Source of the DNA: Pseudomonas aeruginosa PAO1
GTDB taxonomy: Bacteria; Pseudomonadota; Gammaproteobacteria; Pseudomonadales; Pseudomonadaceae
Strand: one strand, 5' to 3'
DNA: 64,000 bases
Assembly: GCF_000006765.1 (NCBI RefSeq)
Contig: NC_002516.2
Below the pieces are notes generated by a model. It saw only the letters and a list, made by a program, of their open reading frames with translations. It had not been told where the DNA came from and did not search any database. Positions 4,512-41,218 of this stretch are shown piece after piece. A program made the position numbers and the translations under genes. The stretch's first letter is position 1; every line of letters begins with the position of its first letter.

Positions 4512-6104
<1,593 letters not shown>

Positions 6105-27935: not shown

Positions 27936-29234
27936 TCACCCCTTCACATGGCGCCGCTCCCCCATCACCCAGGTCTCCGCCACCGCGCGGTCGTCGCCCA
28001 GGGTGTTCAGCACGAACAGGGTATCGGCCAGGCCGCGCGCATGCTCCATGCGCTGGGCGATCATCGGCGTGGCGGCCAGGTCGAGGGCGACGAAGTCGGC
28101 TTCGCGGCCGGGCAGGAAGTTACCGACCAGGCCGTCCAGGTCGAGCGCCCTGGCGCCGCCGAGGGTGGCCAGGTAGAGCGCCTGGAACGGATCGAGGCTG
28201 GTGCCGCGCAATTGCTGGATCTTGTAGGCGTCGGCGAGGTTGGCCAGCAGCGACAGGCTGGTGCCGCCGCCGACGTCGCTGCCGATGCCGACGCGGATGC
28301 CGTATTGCTGGGCGCGGCCAAGGTCGAACAGGCCGGAGCCGATGAACAGGTTGGAACTGGGACAGTGCGCCAGCGCCGCGTTCTTGTGCGCCAGGCAGCG
28401 GCATTCGCGTTCGGAGAGATGGATGCCATGGGCGAACACGCTGCGTTCGCCGACCAGGCCGGCGCGATGATAGACGTCCAGGTAGTCCTGCGCCTGGGGA
28501 AACAGCTCGCCGACCCAGGCGACTTCCTTGAGGTTCTCCGAAAGATGGGTGTGCAGGTAGACGCCGGGATACTCGTCCAGCAGGCGCGCCGCCGCGGCCA
28601 GTTGCTCGGGCGAGGAGGTCGGCGCGAAGCGCGGGGTGACCGCGTATTGCAGGCGCCCGTTGCCGTGCCAGCGCTCGATCAGCGCGCGGCTCTCGGCGTA
28701 GCCACTGGCCGCGGTATCGCACAGCGCCGGCGGCGCGTTGCGGTCCATCAGCACCTTGCCGGCGATCATCCGTAGGCGGCGCTTCTGCGCGGCCTGGAAG
28801 AATGCCTCGGCGGATACCGCATGGACCGTGCCGAACACCAGCGCGGTAGTGGTGCCGTGGCGCAGCAGTTCGTCGAGGAACAGCTCGGCCTGGGCGGCGG
28901 CGTAGCCGGCATCGGCAAAGCGCTGCTCGGCGGGAAAGGTGTGGGTTTCCAGCCAGTCCAGCAGTTGGGTGCCGTAGGAGGCGATCACTCCGAGTTGCGG
29001 GTAATGCACATGGCAATCGACGAAGCCGGGCAGCAGCAGGCGCTGCGGATGCTCCTCCAGCGGCAGGTCGGCGGGCAGTTGCGGCAGCAGGTAGGTTGCG
29101 TGATCGAGCGCGCGCACGTGGCCGTGTTCGATCCACAGCAGGCCGTCCTCGAAATACTCCCAGGCCTTGTCGCCGAGTTTCGCCGGGTCGCCGAGGAAAT
29201 GCAGGATCCGCCCGCGATGAGCCGAACTGCTCAT
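27936..29234 (-). CDS. guaD: Guanine deaminase
   Basis: PGFVDCHVHYPQ, VTPRFAPT, HTHLSEN, HCPSSNLFIGSG and GSDVGGG motifs. GGGAG RBS before ATG 29234. Confidence 0.92.
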   Translation of the reverse strand: MSSSAHRGRILHFLGDPAKLGDKAWEYFEDGLLWIEHGHVRALDHATYLLPQLPADLPLEEHPQRLLLPGFVDCHVHYPQLGVIASYGTQLLDWLETHTFPAEQRFADAGYAAAQAELFLDELLRHGTTTALVFGTVHAVSAEAFFQAAQKRRLRMIAGKVLMDRNAPPALCDTAASGYAESRALIERWHGNGRLQYAVTPRFAPTSSPEQLAAAARLLDEYPGVYLHTHLSENLKEVAWVGELFPQAQDYLDVYHRAGLVGERSVFAHGIHLSERECRCLAHKNAALAHCPSSNLFIGSGLFDLGRAQQYGIRVGIGSDVGGGTSLSLLANLADAYKIQQLRGTSLDPFQALYLATLGGARALDLDGLVGNFLPGREADFVALDLAATPMIAQRMEHARGLADTLFVLNTLGDDRAVAETWVMGERRHVKG

Positions 29235-29397
29235 CGCGCTCCCGCCGTGGTCGGAGTGCAGGATAAGTGGGGGGACGAAGTTGCCAGCAGGTACTGCATC
29301 GTTCATCTCCTCTGCTGCCGGAATGGCGCTTTCGCCTCTTTAGTCCGGGAAATCGACGGAAATATCCCGTCTTTGGCGCGTGATCTCGCTTCCGCCA

Positions 29398-30208
29398 TTA
29401 TGCACTGTGCGCATGCTGTGGATAAGTCTGTGTGTAGCGCGTGTGCGGAAAGATTGCACGAGCCATTGCGGGATGTGCCCATCTGGCTTCCGGCAGGCGA
29501 TCCGCGGAAAGCGTTCCGGCACCTTGAATCCGCCTTGCGAAATGCCCGGTCGGCAACTGGCGCTTCTGTGGGTTTGTCTGTGGAAAAGCTGTTCGCATTC
29601 CCCGTTGAAAAAATGCCTTCGGCGGTCGGGGGAAAGGCATTGGACGGAGCCGCAGGATTTCTCCCGGTTGGCGAAAGAGCCAGGGAAAAGGTGCTGTGGA
29701 ATGCGCCACGACGGTGCATCGCGAAACTGTGGACAGCGGATCCACCCATGGCGCCGCCGAGCATGCTTCCGTCGATCGCCGCGGACTTTCCTGGAAAGCC
29801 GGAAAACCCAGTATTCATGGGCATCATGGCGTCTAAAGGGGAAGTCCTGGAGACATTTTCACGGGCATTCCCGTTCCGCGGGTTTCCTGTGGAAAAGCTG
29901 TTGGCAAACTGTGCCGGAAGCGGGCCGCCGGGGCTGCCCCAGGGATTCGGCCGACCCGTGGCTTGGCCGGGAGAGATCGTCCTGCCGTGCTCCTCCGAAC
30001 GGCTGTCGATATCTTGTGGATAAAGCTGTTGGCAAAGTGTTGGAGAAAATGCCTTGCCAGGTCGCGCCCATGGCCTGCCGGGTTGGCTGTTTTCTGTCCA
30101 GCGCCGATGTTGCGAAAATTGCCGGGACGGTCGGCGCGGGAGGCTTCCCAAGGTCCCGGATGGGCTCCCGACACGCTGTGGATAACTCTGTGAGCAAGGT
30201 GGTGATGA
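29398..30208. other. Cluster of DnaA boxes (five consensus matches plus phased degenerate boxes)
   Basis: TGTGGATAA at 29417, 30015 and 30177; TGTGGAAAA at 29579 and 29888 (both fit TTWTNCACA on the minus strand). One oppositely oriented TTATGCACT at 29398. Confidence 0.75.
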
Positions 30209-30279
30209 CTGTTTTGCGACAAATGCTCACGCGGGTGCGCCGCAGGGTTGCCCGCAAATGTGCCGCGGCGTCCCAGGTG

Positions 30280-30378
30280 TGCCCCGGCTTGGTGCCGCTC
30301 GGCGCGGGAGCCTGGTCCGTGGCTCCCGGTGCAAGCCGCGTTCCAGGGCTTTCCTGACCTCCTGGCCAGGTATTTGCA
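30280..30378 (+). promoter_or_regulatory. Sigma-54 promoter (TGGCCAGGTATTTGCA, 30363-30378) with an NtrC-like upstream site (TGCCCC-N5-GGTGCC, 30280-30296)
   Basis: Exact GG-N10-GC spacing with TTGCA. The upstream site matches TGCACC-N5-GGTGCA at 10/12, about 100 bp upstream of the predicted start. Confidence 0.65.
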
Positions 30379-30416
30379 CCGGCCGCCGCATCGTCGAGCA
30401 ACCGATCGGGTCCGCC

Positions 30417-31988
30417 ATGTCCGCACCTTCCTCCTTCGCGCCGCCGCGCCTCGAACTGCGCGGGATCAGCAAGCGTTATCCGGGTTGCCTGGCCAACGAC
30501 CGCATCGACCTGTGCATCGACGCCGGCGAGATCCACGCCCTGCTCGGTGAGAACGGCGCCGGCAAGAGCACGCTGATGAAGATCATCTACGGCGTGACCC
30601 GTCCCGATGCCGGCGAGATCCGCTGGCAGGGCGAGCCAGTGCAGGTACGCGACCCGGCTCGCGCCCGGGCGCTGGGGATCGGCATGGTGTTCCAGCATTT
30701 CTCCCTGTTCGAGACGCTCAGCGTGGCGGAGAACATCGCGCTCGCCCTCGGCGCCGAGGCGGGCAGCCCGCGCCGGTTGGAGGCGCGTATTCGCGAGGTG
30801 TCGCAGCGCTACGGCATGCCGCTGGAGCCTCGCCGGCTGGTCCATGGGCTGTCCATCGGCGAGCGCCAGCGGGTGGAGATCGTGCGCTGCCTGATGCAGG
30901 ACATCCGCCTGCTGATCCTCGACGAGCCGACCTCGGTGCTGACCCCGCGCGAGGCCGAGGATCTCTTCGTCACCCTGCGCCGTCTTGCGGAGGAGGGTTG
31001 CAGTGTCCTCTTCATCAGCCACAAGCTGGCCGAGGTCCGTGCGCTCTGCCAGCGCGCCACGGTGCTGCGCGGCGGACGGGTGGCCGGACAGTGCGTGCCG
31101 GCGCAATGTTCCGATCTCGAGCTGGCGCGGCTGATGGTGGGCGACGCCGAGGGCCTGGCGGCGGAGTATCCGAAGGTCACCGGCGGCGCGCCTTTCCTCC
31201 AGGTGCGCGACCTGCACTGGCGCAACCCGGACCCCTTCGGCGTGTCCTTCGCTGGCCTCGACCTGGAGGTGCGCAGCGGCGAGATCCTCGGTATCGCCGG
31301 GGTCGCCGGCAACGGCCAGGACGAGTTGCTTGCCCTGCTCAGCGGCGAAGTGCGCCTGCCGCGCGCCCAGGCCGAGCGCATCCGCCTCGGCGGCTGCGCC
31401 GGCGCGCACCTGGCGCCGGATGCGCGGCGCCGCGCCGGCCAGGCCTTCGTGCCCGCCGAGCGGCTGGGGCACGGCGCGGTGCCGGAGATGAGCCTGGCGG
31501 ACAATGCGCTGCTCACCGCCTTCCAGCAGGGACTGGTGAAGCGCGGGTTGGTCCGGCGGCGCAAGGTGCTGGCGCTGGCCGAGGAGATCATCCGCCGTTT
31601 CGCCGTGAAGGCCCCGGGTGCCGGGGCGCCGGCACGCAGCCTTTCCGGCGGCAACCTGCAGAAGTTCATTCTCGGCCGCGAGATCCTCCAGGCCCCGCGC
31701 CTGCTGGTGGCGGCGCATCCCACCTGGGGCGTGGACGTCGGCGCGGCGGCGCTGATCCACCGCGCGCTGATCGCCTTGCGCGATGCCGGTACGGCGATCC
31801 TGGTGGTCTCCGAGGACCTCGACGAGCTGTTCCTGCTCAGCGACCGCATCGCCGCGCTGTGTTCGGGTCGGCTGTGCCCGGCGGTCGCCACCGCGAGCGC
31901 TTCGCCGCAGAAGGTCGGCGGCTGGATGGCCGGTCAATTCGAGGCGCCGGCGGCGGTCGCCGGCGCCGTTGCCCAAGGGAGCCTGTGA
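30417..31988 (+). CDS. ABC transporter ATP-binding protein (CUT2/nucleoside-purine type, two ABC domains)
   Basis: GENGAGKST, LSIGERQRVEI, LILDEPT and LSGGNLQK motifs. Confidence 0.93.
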   Translation: MSAPSSFAPPRLELRGISKRYPGCLANDRIDLCIDAGEIHALLGENGAGKSTLMKIIYGVTRPDAGEIRWQGEPVQVRDPARARALGIGMVFQHFSLFETLSVAENIALALGAEAGSPRRLEARIREVSQRYGMPLEPRRLVHGLSIGERQRVEIVRCLMQDIRLLILDEPTSVLTPREAEDLFVTLRRLAEEGCSVLFISHKLAEVRALCQRATVLRGGRVAGQCVPAQCSDLELARLMVGDAEGLAAEYPKVTGGAPFLQVRDLHWRNPDPFGVSFAGLDLEVRSGEILGIAGVAGNGQDELLALLSGEVRLPRAQAERIRLGGCAGAHLAPDARRRAGQAFVPAERLGHGAVPEMSLADNALLTAFQQGLVKRGLVRRRKVLALAEEIIRRFAVKAPGAGAPARSLSGGNLQKFILGREILQAPRLLVAAHPTWGVDVGAAALIHRALIALRDAGTAILVVSEDLDELFLLSDRIAALCSGRLCPAVATASASPQKVGGWMAGQFEAPAAVAGAVAQGSL

Positions 31989-33085
31989 TGCTGTTGTCCC
32001 TGGAACCGCGCGGCCGGCAGTCGCGCTGGATGCTGCTGGCCTCTCCGCTGCTGGCGGGGTTGCTGACCCTGGTCTGCGGCGCGCTGCTGTTCGCCTGTCT
32101 CGGCCACGATCCCTGGCAGACCCTGCATACCGTGCTGGTACAGCCGCTCAGCGACCTCTATGGGCTCGGCGAGCTGCTGGTCAAGGCCATGCCGATCCTG
32201 CTCTGTGCCCTCGGCCTGGCACTGGCCTACCAGGCGCGCGTGTGGAACATCGGCGCGGAGGGCCAGTTGCTGGTCGGCGCCCTGGCCGGCAGCGCGGTGG
32301 CGATCCAGTTGCTCGACTGGCAGAGCCGCTGGGCGCTGGCCTGGGTGCTGCTCGCCGGCACCGCTGCCGGGGCGCTCTGGGCCGGGTTCGCCGCCTGGCT
32401 GCGAACGCGCTTCAACGCCAACGAGATCCTGACCACCATCATGCTCAACTACATCGCGCTGAACCTGCTGCTGTACGGCGTGCACGGGCCGTTGAAGGAC
32501 CCGGACGGCTTCAACTTCCCGCAGTCGGCGCTGTTCGGCGAGGCCAGCCGCCTGCCGGCGCTGTTCGAGGACAGCCGGGTGCACCTTGGCGCATTGTTCG
32601 GCCTGCTGGCGCTGGCGGCGGTCTGGGTGCTGGCGCAGCGCAGCTTCCTCGGTTTCCAGGTCCGCGTGCTCGGCCTCGACCGCCGCGCCGCCGGTTTCGT
32701 CGGTTTCCGCGAGAAGCGCCTGGTCTGGTTCGTGCTGCTGTTCTCCGGCGCGCTGGCAGGCCTGGCCGGCGTCTGCGAGGTCGCCGGGCCGATCGGCCAA
32801 CTGGTGCCGCAGGTCTCGCCGGGCTACGGCTATGCGGCGATCACCGTGGCCTTCCTTGGCCGTCTCAATCCGTTCGGCATCCTCTGCGCCAGCCTGCTGA
32901 TGGCGTTGCTCTACCTCGGCGGCGAGGCCGCGCAGATGAGCCTCAACCTGCCATTGGCGCTGTCCGGGCTGTTCCAGGGGATGATGCTGTTCTTCCTCCT
33001 CGCCTGCGACGTGCTGATCCTCTACCGCCCACGTTTGCACGGACGCTGGCGCAAGCGCCCGGCGCTGCGCGACGCCCTGGCCTGA
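31988..33085 (+). CDS. ABC transporter permease (BPD_transp_2)
   Basis: Multi-TM with WNIGAEGQL, NEILTTIMLNY and GYGYAAITVAFLG; coupled to the ATPase gene. Confidence 0.92.
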   Translation: MLLSLEPRGRQSRWMLLASPLLAGLLTLVCGALLFACLGHDPWQTLHTVLVQPLSDLYGLGELLVKAMPILLCALGLALAYQARVWNIGAEGQLLVGALAGSAVAIQLLDWQSRWALAWVLLAGTAAGALWAGFAAWLRTRFNANEILTTIMLNYIALNLLLYGVHGPLKDPDGFNFPQSALFGEASRLPALFEDSRVHLGALFGLLALAAVWVLAQRSFLGFQVRVLGLDRRAAGFVGFREKRLVWFVLLFSGALAGLAGVCEVAGPIGQLVPQVSPGYGYAAITVAFLGRLNPFGILCASLLMALLYLGGEAAQMSLNLPLALSGLFQGMMLFFLLACDVLILYRPRLHGRWRKRPALRDALA

Positions 33086-33107
33086 GCCGAACCGCCGAGG
33101 AACCACG

Positions 33108-34034
33108 ATGGATATCGATCTGCTCGACAACCTGCTGTTCGCCATGGTCCGCACCGGTACTCCGCTGCTGCTGGTGGCCCTGGGCGAACTGGTCTGCGAG
33201 AGAAGCGGGGTGCTCAACCTGGGCCAGGAGGGGATGATGCTGTTCGGCGCGGTGATCGGCTTCATGGTCGCCTTCTCCAGCGGCAGCCTGTGGCTCGGCG
33301 TGCTCCTCGCGGTGCTCGCCGGCATGCTGCTGGCGGCGCTGTTCGCCGGGGTCGCCCTGTACCTGAACGCCAACCAGGTGGCCTGCGGCCTGGCGCTGAC
33401 CATCTTCGGCGTCGGCCTGGCGTCGTTCGTCGGCGCCGCCTGGGTCGGCAAGCCGCTGCAAGGGTTCGCCCCGCTGGCGCTGCCGGTGCTGGGCGAGTTG
33501 CCGCTGCTCGGGCGCATGCTGTTCGCCCAGGACGCGCTGGTCTACCTGAGCCTGGCGCTGTTCGCCGCGGTCGCCTGGATGCTCCTGCGCAGCCGCGCCG
33601 GGCTGGTTCTCCAGGCGGTCGGCGAGAACCCTGACGCGGCCAGCGCGATGGGCCTGCCGGTGCTGCGCGTGCGCACCCTGGCGGTGCTCTTCGGCGGCGC
33701 CATGGCCGGCCTGGCCGGTGCCTACCTGTCGCTGGCCTACACGCCGATGTGGGCGGAGAACATGACCGCCGGACGCGGCTGGATCGCCCTGGCGCTGGTG
33801 GTCTTCGCCAGTTGGCGGGTGCTCCGCGTGCTGCTCGGTGCCTGGTTGTTCGGCCTGGCCAGCATCCTGCACCTGGTGGCCCAGGGGGTCGGGCTGTCGA
33901 TTCCGGCCAACCTGCTGGCGATGCTGCCCTATGCGGCGACCATCCTGGTGCTGGTCCTGCTCTCCCGCGATGCCCTGCGCACCCGGCTGTATGCCCCGGT
34001 TTCCCTGGGCCAGCCGTGGAAGGCCGGGCACTGA
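33108..34034 (+). CDS. ABC transporter permease (BPD_transp_2)
   Basis: ERSGVLNLGQEGMML, AVGENP and GRGWIALALV motifs. Confidence 0.92.
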   Translation: MDIDLLDNLLFAMVRTGTPLLLVALGELVCERSGVLNLGQEGMMLFGAVIGFMVAFSSGSLWLGVLLAVLAGMLLAALFAGVALYLNANQVACGLALTIFGVGLASFVGAAWVGKPLQGFAPLALPVLGELPLLGRMLFAQDALVYLSLALFAAVAWMLLRSRAGLVLQAVGENPDAASAMGLPVLRVRTLAVLFGGAMAGLAGAYLSLAYTPMWAENMTAGRGWIALALVVFASWRVLRVLLGAWLFGLASILHLVAQGVGLSIPANLLAMLPYAATILVLVLLSRDALRTRLYAPVSLGQPWKAGH

Positions 34035-40442: not shown

Positions 40443-41069
40443 TCAGCCGTGGCGCCGGCTGGCGAGTTGGCGCAGGGCCTGCTCGGCGTCGCCGACGACT
40501 AGCGTTGCCGGCACCGCCAGCATCAGGTTGAGCGGCAGGCCGAACTCTTCCAGGGTCATGCCGTCGCGGTCGCGGGTCGGATCCTCGCCGATCAGCTCCG
40601 GGGCGTGCCGGCGGATTCGCTCGGCGTAGCTGCCGGCGTCGTCGACGTAGCCATAGACCGGCTTGCCGAGGGCGGTGGCATAGCCGACCTCGAAGGCGGT
40701 GCCGCTGTCCGGCTCGGCGCCGCGGAAGAAGTTCAGGTTGGCCAGCACCGCGTCGGCGCGTTCGATCAGGCCGATGTTGGCGCGGTAGATCCAGGCCGCC
40801 TGTTCGCGCGGCTCGGCGAGCTGTTTCGGCAGCGCGTTGTCCAGCGGGTAGAGGCCTTCGAAGCCGTAGCGTGCGCACAGTGCCTTGAGCGCTTCGCCGT
40901 GGGCGACGGCGTCGGCGCGGAACACGTCGGGACCGGCCAGATAGAGTTTCCGCGGTCTGGCCGCGGCGCGTACGCCCGGCAGGCTGCCGAGCAGGGCGCC
41001 GGCGGGCAGCAGCAGGGCCGCCAGGCGCAAGAAGGTACGACGGCTGCTGGAACCGTTGGATCGGCTCAT
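40443..41069 (-). CDS. Nucleoside 2'-deoxyribosyltransferase family protein with twin-arginine signal
   Basis: LYLAGPDVF, EPDSGTAFEVGYA.ALGKP and FGLPLNLML motifs; N-terminal SRRTFLR plus h-region. Confidence 0.87.
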   Translation of the reverse strand: MSRSNGSSSRRTFLRLAALLLPAGALLGSLPGVRAAARPRKLYLAGPDVFRADAVAHGEALKALCARYGFEGLYPLDNALPKQLAEPREQAAWIYRANIGLIERADAVLANLNFFRGAEPDSGTAFEVGYATALGKPVYGYVDDAGSYAERIRRHAPELIGEDPTRDRDGMTLEEFGLPLNLMLAVPATLVVGDAEQALRQLASRRHG

Positions 41070-41218
41070 CGGATGCTCCCCCCAGGATGCCGGACGCCCC
41101 GCGCGGGGGCCGTTGTTGTCCGGGGATTATGGGCAGCAAGCGACATGCCAGGCGGCGCCTACCTGTCAGCAGATAGGCGGCGGCTCGCGTGCTTCTTCCG
41201 GCGCTCGGCGCGGGCGCT

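What the first reader, a model, noticed from the sequence alone, without database searches (positions are those of the whole stretch)
29398..30208. Array of DnaA boxes in a gene-free 1.2-kb spacer: candidate datA/DBC-like replication-control locus
Seen in the sequence: five 9-mers match the DnaA consensus TTWTNCACA, all on the minus strand. They read on + as TGTGGATAA (29417, 30015, 30177) and TGTGGAAAA (29579, 29888), with weaker TGTGGAATG (29695) and TGTGGACAG (29728). A rough hand estimate at 66% GC is about 1e-5 matches per bp, or about 0.01 per kb, so five in 770 bp is far from chance. I noticed no other perfect box in the window, but the scan was by eye. The spacer is much longer than the two flanking promoters need, and I see no AT-rich unwinding element. 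Established: non-origin DnaA-box clusters (E. coli datA/DARS, B. subtilis DBCs) regulate initiation timing. The surrounding genes suggest this locus lies outside the dnaA/gidA origin region, so it is not oriCI/oriCII. Inference: it is a DnaA titration or nucleotide-state control site. I know of no description of it.
Basis: partly seen in the sequence, partly recalled or inferred. Interest (0 to 1): 0.88.

Follow-up and report, generated by a model that had tools for sequence, protein, structure and literature searches.

The report
Conserved DnaA-box cluster beside purine genes
A 1.1-kb non-coding gap between two purine-handling genes of Pseudomonas aeruginosa holds five conserved binding sites for the replication initiator DnaA, so it probably links purine supply to DNA replication or soaks up DnaA, but nobody has yet shown DnaA binding there.

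Summary
The only five TTWTNCACA matches in the 64-kb window (0.5 expected) lie in the non-coding spacer between guanine deaminase (PA0134) and a nucleoside-type ABC importer (PA0136-38). All five are on the minus strand. This is not an origin: it sits about 153 kb into the PAO1 map and has no AT-rich unwinding element.

Each strong box anchors weaker 9-mers phased 11-12 bp apart, and box 5 plus its flank equals E. coli oriC R4. Between PAO1-type and PA7-type strains the box bases are 44/45 identical, against 70% for the rest of the spacer. In M. furukawaii, P. chlororaphis, a fluorescens-like contig and a syringae-group strain, CTGTGGATAA boxes sit about 260 and 460 bp upstream of the same operon. 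That operon has a conserved sigma-54-type promoter, and three of these relatives carry a further box at its start site. In the citronellolis clade the boxes lie inside neighbouring genes and are built from rare codons.

The boxes are therefore under selection and very probably bind DnaA. My preferred reading is DnaA control of purine uptake and catabolism genes; a DnaA sink is the main rival. I found no published description. It is a new member of a known kind.

The parts
27936..29306 (-). Guanine deaminase gene (PA0134). The homology-supported start is at 29234; the annotated longer start is at 29306.
   Evidence: NCBIfam guanine deaminase, E=2.6e-200. A 99%-identical P. aeruginosa protein of 456 aa exists. 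PAO1 coordinates are 151936-153306.
29307..30416 (.). Non-coding divergent spacer holding the whole box cluster.
   Evidence: No GC3 periodicity. Substitutions are evenly spread over the three phases and indels break the frame. No Pfam hits and no Rfam hits.
29398..29450 (-). Box 1 array. Strong TTATCCACA at 29417-29425. Weak same-strand 9-mers at 29429 and 29442. A weak oppositely oriented TTATGCACT at 29398-29406.
   Evidence: The island 29405-29432 is identical in the PA7-type strain.
29563..29599 (-). Box 2 array. Weak TGTGGGTTT at 29567, then 3 bp, then strong TTTTCCACA at 29579-29587.
   Evidence: This is the longest perfectly conserved island, at 37 nt.
29696..29836 (+). PA0135, an annotated 46-aa hypothetical ORF, probably not a gene. 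It overlaps the weak site TGTGGACAG (29728-29736).
   Evidence: ORF listed. PAO1 coordinates 153696-153836. No coding signal. The stretch ACTGTGGACAGCG is conserved.
29884..29914 (-). Box 3 array. Strong TTTTCCACA at 29888-29896, then 2 bp, then weak TGTTGGCAA at 29899.
   Evidence: A 31-nt island is identical in the PA7-type strain.
30004..30049 (-). Box 4 array. Weak site at 30004, strong TTATCCACA at 30015-30023, weak sites at 30027 and 30039.
   Evidence: In the PA7-type strain the strong box has one change (TGTTGATAA), while the flanking CTGTTGGCAAAGTGTTGGA is conserved.
30069..30100 (.). A 32-nt conserved island of unknown role (…TTGGCTGTTTTCTGTCCA). A related TTTTnGTCCA element lies 60-80 bp from the distal box in M. 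furukawaii and P. chlororaphis.
   Evidence: The cross-species comparison is my reading of the sequences.
30175..30214 (-). Box 5 array. Strong TTATCCACA at 30177-30185, then 3 bp, weak TGTGAGCAA, then 2 bp, weak TGGTGATGA.
   Evidence: CTGTGGATAA is the only block upstream of the promoter that is identical in all four aligned species. CTGTGGATAACTCTGT equals the reverse complement of the E. coli oriC R4 box and its flank.
30290..30334 (.). TGGTGCC and GGTGCAA motifs resembling NtrC-type activator half-sites (inferred).
   Evidence: A TGGTGCC/TGCACCA block is conserved in the alignment. TGCACCAAAACGCA sites occur in L093 and L096. Assignment to NtrC rests on my memory of the consensus.
30346..30378 (+). 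Sigma-54-type promoter: TTCCTGAC, then TGGCCAGGTATTTGCA (30363-30378), 39 nt before the ATG.
   Evidence: TGGCCAG-N4-TTGC is conserved in every Pseudomonas-type locus where I looked at the upstream region.
30417..34034 (+). ABC importer operon (PA0136-PA0138): a double ATPase and two permeases.
   Evidence: NCBIfam and Pfam. Orthologues sit among purine catabolic genes and Bmp-family binding-protein genes.

Best explanation
The spacer is a cis-regulatory DNA region bound by the initiator protein DnaA. Five high-affinity boxes (CTGTGGAWAA on the plus strand) each anchor one to three weaker 9-mers set 11-12 bp apart on the same helical face. This is the arrangement that lets ATP-DnaA spread from a strong box at E. 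coli oriC. The ancestral Pseudomonas form has two upstream boxes, at about -260 and -460 from the ATG, and in three of the four relatives sampled a further box on the start site of a sigma-54-type promoter for a nucleoside-type ABC importer. In the P. aeruginosa lineage the upstream part grew to five boxes by old tandem duplication of a unit of about 160 bp. I propose that DnaA occupancy modulates transcription of the importer operon and of the divergent guanine deaminase gene, tying purine uptake and breakdown to replication-initiation potential. Holding perhaps 5-15 DnaA molecules about 153 kb from oriC would be a side effect or a second function. Shown: the sites exist, are far from chance, are non-coding, are conserved within and between species, and match sequences that P. 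aeruginosa DnaA binds in vitro. Inferred: that DnaA binds here in vivo, that it oligomerises on the weak sites, and that it affects transcription.
For: All five consensus boxes of the window lie in the spacer. Box bases are 44/45 identical between PAO1-type and PA7-type strains, against 70% for the rest of the spacer (binomial P of about 3e-6, my arithmetic), and the longest conserved islands centre on the boxes. A weak 9-mer with up to 3 mismatches sits 11-12 bp downstream of four of the five strong boxes and 11-12 bp upstream of the fifth (box 2), with further ones at -11 or +23 to +27; such 9-mers are about 3-fold enriched on that strand. In a four-species alignment only CTGTGGATAA and the TTCCTGAC…TGGCCAG-N4-TTGC promoter stay identical. 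The same layout of two minus-strand boxes about 200 bp apart recurs in M. furukawaii, P. chlororaphis and a fluorescens-like contig; the syringae-group strain has one perfect and one one-mismatch upstream box. A plus-strand box follows the -12 element in M. furukawaii, the fluorescens-like contig and the syringae-group strain. Background density in 47 high-GC loci is 0.012 boxes per kb. Purified P. aeruginosa DnaA shifts probes carrying a single TTATCCACA but not a mutated box (PMC13729189), and DnaA acts as a transcription factor at gidAB-parAB in this species (PMC13438810). The 11-mer CTGTGGATAAC equals both E. coli oriC R1 and R4, and the box 5 flank matches the R4 flank for 16 nt. The neighbourhood is a purine salvage and catabolism island.
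Against: No binding or expression data exist for this locus. P. aeruginosa lacks the start-site box found in three relatives. Boxes 1-3 lie 500-1000 bp from the importer promoter, far for ordinary promoter control. A 50-bp insertion in the PA7-type strain changes the distance between box 1 and guaD, so no fixed geometry with the guaD promoter is kept. Perfect high-affinity boxes are likely to be occupied all the time, which suits a sink or anchor better than a graded sensor. Related species with the same promoter have no boxes (L091, L093, L096), so the boxes are dispensable for basic operon expression. In the citronellolis clade the boxes lie inside coding sequences up to several kb from the promoter, which is unlike a classical operator.
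Confidence: 0.42

Rival explanations
1. Replication-control locus. The cluster acts on DnaA itself: as a passive high-affinity sink duplicated soon after initiation, or as a datA-like site that promotes ATP-DnaA hydrolysis. The flanking genes are incidental.
For: Five boxes are about 4% of the 129 genome-wide boxes, packed in 0.02% of the genome and about 153 kb from the start of the PAO1 map. The P. aeruginosa lineage expanded from two to five boxes by duplication and kept them. Each strong box has phased weak sites that could favour ATP-DnaA oligomers. In the citronellolis clade, CTGTGGATAA boxes are kept inside xdh and ATPase coding sequence using rare codons (GCT 5%, GAT 20%, AAA 11%, GTT 3%, AGG 2%), which argues for a role independent of promoter geometry.
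Against: No IHF consensus with up to one mismatch in the spacer. All strong boxes share one orientation and are 127-309 bp apart. The boxes keep position and orientation relative to the operon promoter in lineages where the locus sits at other record coordinates (0.8 Mb in P. chlororaphis CP025309.1, 2.7 Mb in strain QL9). Those record starts are unverified. Some Pseudomonas lack the boxes entirely. Hda is essential in P. aeruginosa (PMC13729189), so any such back-up system is minor.
Confidence: 0.27
2. The sites belong to another DNA-binding protein, for example a response regulator that reads direct CTGTGGA repeats spaced 11-12 bp apart. The match to the DnaA consensus is coincidental.
For: The conserved footprint is longer than 9 bp (28-37 nt islands). 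It contains direct CTGTnnn repeats with A-rich spacers, similar to Pho-box-type sites as I recall them. Tandem TGTGGAG-N5-CTGTGGATAA pairs recur across species. An EMSA probe named PA0136 that spans box 5 was used in a transcription-factor atlas, but the factor cannot be identified from the held text.
Against: Across species the invariant part is exactly the high-affinity DnaA 9-11-mer, identical to E. coli R1/R4, and not the neighbouring repeats. The site is asymmetric and often solitary. Motif-selected copies scattered inside genes are unusual for an operon-specific regulator. No alternative factor with this motif turned up in the literature I searched.
Confidence: 0.15
3. A decayed protein-coding gene or a real small gene (PA0135, or the 314-aa ORF called in some assemblies), in which the repeats encode V-D/E-K peptide motifs.
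For: Three ORFs of 282, 325 and 400 aa cross the spacer. In the frames I read by eye from the sequence, the boxes would encode VDK or VEK. Gene callers place ORFs here.
Against: GC by codon position is flat. Substitutions fall 88/86/88 over the three phases, and the 50-nt and 1-nt indels break any frame. The boxes fall in two different frames of the 325-aa ORF (my arithmetic from the coordinates). No Pfam hit. The 11-12-bp repeat spacing is not a multiple of three.
Confidence: 0.03
4. A cryptic or relic replication origin, chromosomal or from an integrated plasmid.
For: A cluster of same-orientation DnaA boxes with repeated units.
Against: No AT-rich unwinding element: the minimum 30-nt GC is 37%, at the boxes themselves. 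No rep, par or mobile-element genes nearby. The locus is conserved as the regulatory region of a housekeeping operon across the genus.
Confidence: 0.02

Closest known systems
DnaA-regulated promoters (E. coli dnaA, nrdAB, guaBA; P. aeruginosa gidAB-parAB via oriCII)
   Same: Consensus DnaA boxes lie upstream of, or on, a promoter for genes tied to nucleotide supply or replication. In P. aeruginosa, DnaA has been shown to act as a transcription factor through a box cluster about 130 bp upstream of a promoter (PMC13438810). Three relatives here carry a box right at the start site.
   Different: The target promoter is sigma-54-type. The boxes reach as far as 1 kb upstream. There are five of them, each with phased weak neighbours. 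No regulation has been measured. The E. coli examples are from my memory.
E. coli datA (DnaA-ATP hydrolysis and titration locus)
   Same: An intergenic region of about 1 kb with about five DnaA boxes, outside oriC but on the origin-proximal part of the chromosome. It has strong boxes with close neighbours that could support oligomers.
   Different: No IHF consensus site. The strong boxes are 127-309 bp apart. The cluster co-evolves with a specific operon promoter. There is no sequence homology. Hydrolysis activity is untested.
E. coli DARS1/DARS2 (DnaA-reactivating sequences)
   Same: A non-origin cluster of DnaA boxes in intergenic DNA.
   Different: As I recall, the DARS core needs three tightly spaced boxes with two in opposite orientation. 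Here all strong boxes point the same way, and only a 2-mismatch inverted site lies next to box 1.
B. subtilis DnaA-box clusters (DBCs)
   Same: Several consensus boxes spread over some hundred bp in an intergenic region away from oriC, often next to genes that DnaA also regulates. The question of sink versus regulator is equally open there.
   Different: A different phylum. No YabA/DnaN system is implied here. The sigma-54 context and the phased weak-site arrays are specific to this locus.
E. coli oriC right half (R4-C1-I3 array)
   Same: A strong CTGTGGATAAC box followed after 3 bp and then 2 bp by weak 9-mers in the same orientation. Box 5 shares 16 consecutive bases with R4 and its flank.
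   Different: No unwinding element and no opposed second array. The units are isolated and 127-309 bp apart. The names and spacing of the E. coli weak sites are from my memory.

Membership tests
Non-origin DnaA-box cluster (generic; DBC-like) | Three or more consensus boxes (TTWTNCACA) within about 1 kb, beyond chance | tested here: met
   Five boxes in 770 bp against 0.5 expected in 64 kb. Background is 0.012 per kb in 594 kb of comparable loci.
Non-origin DnaA-box cluster (generic; DBC-like) | Located away from oriC and lacking an unwinding element | tested here: met
   PAO1 coordinates are about 153-154 kb. The neighbours are metabolic genes. No AT-rich stretch.
Non-origin DnaA-box cluster (generic; DBC-like) | DnaA occupies the site in vivo or in vitro | not testable with these tools
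   Only indirect evidence: P. aeruginosa DnaA binds single TTATCCACA probes from oriC (PMC13729189).
datA (DDAH locus) | An essential IHF-binding site between the DnaA boxes | tested here: not met
   No WATCAANNNNTTR match with up to one mismatch in the spacer. IHF sites are degenerate, so this is a weak negative.
datA (DDAH locus) | Closely spaced boxes that support a DnaA oligomer | tested here: inconclusive
   Each strong box has a weak 9-mer 11-12 bp away on one side, most also at about +23. The strong boxes themselves are 127-309 bp apart.
datA (DDAH locus) | Stimulates ATP-DnaA hydrolysis, and its deletion causes over-initiation | not testable with these tools
   This needs biochemistry and genetics.
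DARS | A core of three adjacent boxes, two of them in opposite orientation | tested here: not met
   All five strong boxes are on the minus strand. The only inverted neighbour is TTATGCACT with two mismatches.
Chromosomal replication origin | An AT-rich unwinding element next to the box array | tested here: not met
   The minimum GC of any 30-mer in the spacer is 37%, and that 30-mer is a box.
DnaA-regulated promoter | Boxes in conserved position and orientation relative to a promoter | tested here: met
   Minus-strand boxes lie about 260 and 460 bp upstream of the conserved TGGCCAG-N4-TTGC promoter in four further lineages; in the syringae-group strain the distal one has one mismatch. Box 5 is at -240 in the window.
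DnaA-regulated promoter | A box overlapping the core promoter or start site | tested here: not met
   Present in L086, L092 and L173. Absent in the window, where the sequence is TTGCACCGGCCGCC.
DnaA-regulated promoter | Transcription responds to DnaA level or to box mutation | not testable with these tools
   This needs reporter assays.

The most novel reading that the evidence does not exclude
Pseudomonas keeps a dedicated DnaA-ATP sensing platform at its purine nucleoside import and catabolism locus. Short DnaA oligomers nucleated on five R4-like arrays gate a sigma-54 promoter and the guanine deaminase gene. In P. aeruginosa the same expanded array, duplicated within minutes of initiation, also serves as the species' datA-equivalent. 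This would be the first such locus outside the enterobacteria, and it would show direct two-way coupling between purine economy and initiation control.
Probability: 0.2. Interest if true: 0.8.

Novelty: new member of a known kind. Interest (0 to 1): 0.55.

Why it matters
No datA-, DARS- or DBC-type locus has been described in Pseudomonas in the literature I could search, and Hda-dependent inactivation is the only characterised brake on DnaA there. This cluster is probably among the densest non-origin DnaA-box arrays in the P. aeruginosa genome; I could not scan the whole genome to rank it. It is conserved across the genus, so it gives a defined, deletable 0.8-kb target for asking how DnaA is buffered and what DnaA regulates outside the origin. 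Its fixed association with a purine nucleoside importer and purine-degrading genes suggests a link between nucleotide supply and initiation that can be tested with simple reporters. The motif-selected boxes inside coding sequences of the citronellolis clade are a rare case of a DNA-binding motif overriding codon bias.

Tried and rejected
1. Coding gene or pseudogene. I first suspected a decayed Bmp-type binding-protein gene, because the spacer is the right size and in the right place. I rejected this: no GC3 signal, no Pfam hit, evenly phased substitutions and frame-breaking indels. The Bmp gene lies elsewhere in relatives.

2. Structured RNA or riboswitch. The Rfam permissive scan gave only chance hits. 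The terminator and sigma-70 scans were no better than shuffles.

3. Origin. No unwinding element.

4. datA-type IHF site. None found.

5. Orthologous guaD loci. The single genome-contig scan returned only copies of 64% identity or less, without synteny and without box clusters. They served as background. One apparent 14-box cluster (L053) is a Nextera adapter artefact.

6. Logan contigs with guaD at 72-87% protein identity turned out to be noisy P. aeruginosa assemblies, with spacer DNA nearly identical to the window, and gave no divergence information.

8. Other binding proteins considered from memory and set aside: LexA (no palindrome), ParB half-parS (5-6 of 7 matches only), RutR-like TetR (palindromic sites expected), PhoB (the CTGTCAT core is not matched).

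9. Literature. There is no DnaA ChIP-seq for Pseudomonas, and no paper links PA0134-PA0136 to DnaA. The factor tested on the 'PA0136' EMSA probe could not be identified.

Full report
**What is there**

The window is Pseudomonas aeruginosa. A protein 99% identical to the guanine deaminase is named as P. aeruginosa. Gene coordinates in a published PAO1 table (PA0134 151936-153306, PA0135 153696-153836, PA0136 154417-155988; eLife 2021 supplement) match the window with a constant offset of 124,000.

The finding lies in the divergent spacer between guanine deaminase and the first gene of an ABC importer operon. Guanine deaminase is on the minus strand at 27936-29234/29306. The importer operon is on the plus strand from 30417: a double ATPase and two permeases. 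Further neighbours are bauABCD/R, ahpCF, PPK2, 8-oxoguanine deaminase, a nucleoside hydrolase and adenosine deaminase. The locus therefore sits in a purine salvage and catabolism island, not at dnaA or gidA.

All are on the minus strand and all are in the spacer. Shuffles give a mean of 0.5 and never reach 5. Three are perfect TTATCCACA and two are TTTTCCACA; the only other one-mismatch sites in the window are two on the plus strand, outside the spacer. A recent paper counts 129 such boxes in a whole P. aeruginosa genome (PMC13438810). That gives about 0.02 expected in this spacer.

The spacer is non-coding:
- GC content is flat across codon positions, whereas the flanking genes show about 0.45/0.72/0.89.
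- Substitutions between PAO1-type and PA7-type strains fall 88/86/88 over the three phases, and the indels of 50, 1, 1 and 1 nt break any frame.
- There are no Pfam hits and no Rfam hits.

The annotated 46-aa PA0135, and the larger ORFs that gene callers place here, are probably spurious. There is no AT-rich unwinding element and no IHF consensus.

**Anatomy beyond the 9-mers**

Each strong box sits in a longer unit. On the plus strand the units read as follows:
- Box 1: TGTGGATAA-gtc-TGTGTGTAG
- Box 2: TGTGGGTTT-gtc-TGTGGAAAA
- Box 3: TGTGGAAAA-gc-TGTTGGCAA
- Box 4: TGTGGATAA-agc-TGTTGGCAA-ag-TGTTGGAGA
- Box 5: TGTGGATAA-ctc-TGTGAGCAA-gg-TGGTGATGA

Weak 9-mers with three mismatches lie 11-12 bp from each strong box, in the same orientation: downstream of boxes 1, 3, 4 and 5 and upstream of box 2, with further ones at about +23 to +27 for most.

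The 11-mer CTGTGGATAAC equals both high-affinity boxes R1 and R4 of E. coli oriC. Box 5 with its flank (CTGTGGATAACTCTGT) is identical over 16 nt to the reverse complement of R4 and its flank. I verified this by matching the remembered oriC segment at 100% to the mnmG-mioC gap of E. coli genomes. From my own knowledge, R4 is followed at this spacing by the weak sites C1 and I3, onto which ATP-DnaA spreads.

Self-comparison shows an old tandem duplication of about 162 bp (30001-30159 against 30163-30329, 61% identity). Shorter box-centred similarities link units 2, 3 and 4 and link units 1 and 5.

**Selection within the species complex**

Two PA7-type loci (importer ATPase 95% identical at the protein level, 94.5% at the DNA level) keep the same gene order. 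Their spacer is only 73% identical to the window, yet 44 of the 45 box bases are identical. The stretch from -3 to +30 around each box is 89% identical, against 70% for the rest. The longest perfectly conserved islands (37, 32, 31 and 28 nt) are the arrays of boxes 2, 3 and 1, plus one island of unknown role. Only box 4 has one change.

**Selection across the genus**

Orthologues of the importer ATPase were traced in other Pseudomonas.
- In M. furukawaii, P. chlororaphis, a fluorescens-like metagenome contig and a syringae-group strain, a 500-700-bp spacer precedes the operon. It carries a perfect or one-mismatch CTGTGGATAA box at about -460 and another at about -260 to -280. Both are on the strand opposite to the operon. 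The proximal one is preceded by a weak TGTGGAG box 12 bp upstream (in M. furukawaii it is the distal box that has this weak neighbour).
- In three of these four, a plus-strand box lies immediately after the -12 element of a sigma-54-type promoter.
- In a four-species alignment the only invariant blocks are CTGTGGATAA and TTCCTGAC…TGGCCAG-N4-TTGC. The promoter motif is present in every locus where I looked at the upstream region. A TGGTGCC/TGCACCA block about 100 bp upstream resembles NtrC-type activator sites; this rests on my memory of that consensus.
- Some lineages with the same promoter have no boxes (L091, L093, L096).
- In the citronellolis clade the operon is divergent from xdhABC across a 213-bp spacer without boxes. 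Instead, 3-6 perfect boxes lie inside xdhC, xdhB, xdhA and the ATPase gene. Background is 0.012 per kb. These boxes are spelled with rare codons, such as GCT GTG GAT AAA or GTT ATC CAC AGG. The codon shares are 5%, 20%, 11%, 3% and 2% for GCT, GAT, AAA, GTT and AGG. This points to selection on the DNA motif itself.

**Interpretation**

That DnaA binds here is very likely, at about 0.8 summed over the first two readings below. The invariant core is exactly the high-affinity box. P. aeruginosa DnaA shifts single-box TTATCCACA probes but not a mutated one (PMC13729189). DnaA is also a documented transcription factor in this species (PMC13438810).

What the binding does is not settled.
- I favour DnaA-dependent control of the importer operon and of guanine deaminase (0.42). 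The boxes keep their position and orientation relative to the promoter in distant lineages. Three lineages add a start-site box. The association is with purine genes, whatever the neighbours are.
- A sink or datA-like role (0.27) is supported by the number and perfection of the boxes, by their expansion in P. aeruginosa, by origin-proximal placement at about 153 kb, and by the promoter-independent intragenic boxes. It lacks the IHF site, and it lacks the tight or inverted box geometry that I recall as defining datA and DARS.
- Another protein reading CTGTGGA direct repeats remains possible (0.15).
- The coding and origin readings are effectively excluded.

**Novelty**

Seven literature searches found no description of this cluster and no DnaA ChIP data for Pseudomonas. 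The boxes can only be implicit in a supplementary list of 129 predicted boxes. The kind of element is known (non-origin DnaA-box clusters and DnaA-regulated promoters), so I rate this a new member of a known kind. It has two unusual features: a sigma-54 context, and motif-selected intragenic boxes in one clade.

Noticed in passing
L087 1356-7336; L088 133-6336; L089 1025-2872: In the citronellolis clade (strain QL9, P. citronellolis, P. panipatensis), perfect CTGTGGATAA boxes lie inside xdhC, xdhB, xdhA and the ABC ATPase gene at 20-40 times background. They are spelled with rare codons (GCT GTG GAT AAA; GTT ATC CAC AGG). Their positions differ between L089 and L087/L088, which suggests turnover while the number is maintained.
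   Followed up: partly
L053 7440-8560: The public assembly of Pseudomonas sp. HS-2 contains a 122-bp tandem array and inverted copies of the Nextera/Tn5 mosaic end (CTGTCTCTTATACACATCT). This is an assembly artefact that mimics a cluster of 14 DnaA boxes.
   Followed up: yes
window 30346-30378, and the orthologous sites in L084, L086, L090, L092, L093, L095, L096, L173: A sigma-54-type promoter (TTCCTGAC…TGGCCAG-N4-TTGC) is conserved upstream of the importer operon in the Pseudomonas loci where I read the upstream region, with NtrC-like TGCACCA/TGGTGCC motifs about 100 bp upstream. The operon is probably under nitrogen control.
   Followed up: partly
window 29696-29836: The PAO1 gene PA0135 (46 aa, hypothetical) lies in the spacer but shows no coding signature. 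Other assemblies get ORFs of 108, 146 or 314 aa called here instead.
   Followed up: yes
window 29307-30416 against L084 4844-6000: Outside the conserved islands, the spacer differs by about 30% between PAO1-type and PA7-type strains. That is about three times the third-codon-position divergence of the adjacent ATPase gene (51 of 524 positions). A 50-bp insertion lies at window 29385 in the PA7-type strain.
   Followed up: no
window 30069-30100: A 32-nt island (CATGGCCTGCCGGGTTGGCTGTTTTCTGTCCA) is perfectly conserved in the PA7-type strain. A similar TTTTnGTCCA element lies 60-80 bp from the distal box in M. furukawaii and P. chlororaphis. Its role is unknown.
   Followed up: no
window 30104-30322: An EMSA probe named 'PA0136' in the P. 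aeruginosa transcription-factor atlas (eLife 2021;10:e61885, supplementary file 1) spans box 5. Which factor it was tested with, or whether it was a negative control, could not be found in the held text.
   Followed up: partly
window 41135-41150 (minus strand): A near-consensus sigma-54 element (TGGCATGTCGCTTGCT) lies just upstream of the minus-strand gene at 40443-41126.
   Followed up: no
L090 4610-4690; L173 about 4590-4700: A strongly AT-rich stretch of 70-100 bp lies between the two upstream boxes in P. chlororaphis and the syringae-group strain. It has no counterpart in P. aeruginosa. It could be a bending-protein site or a second promoter.
   Followed up: no
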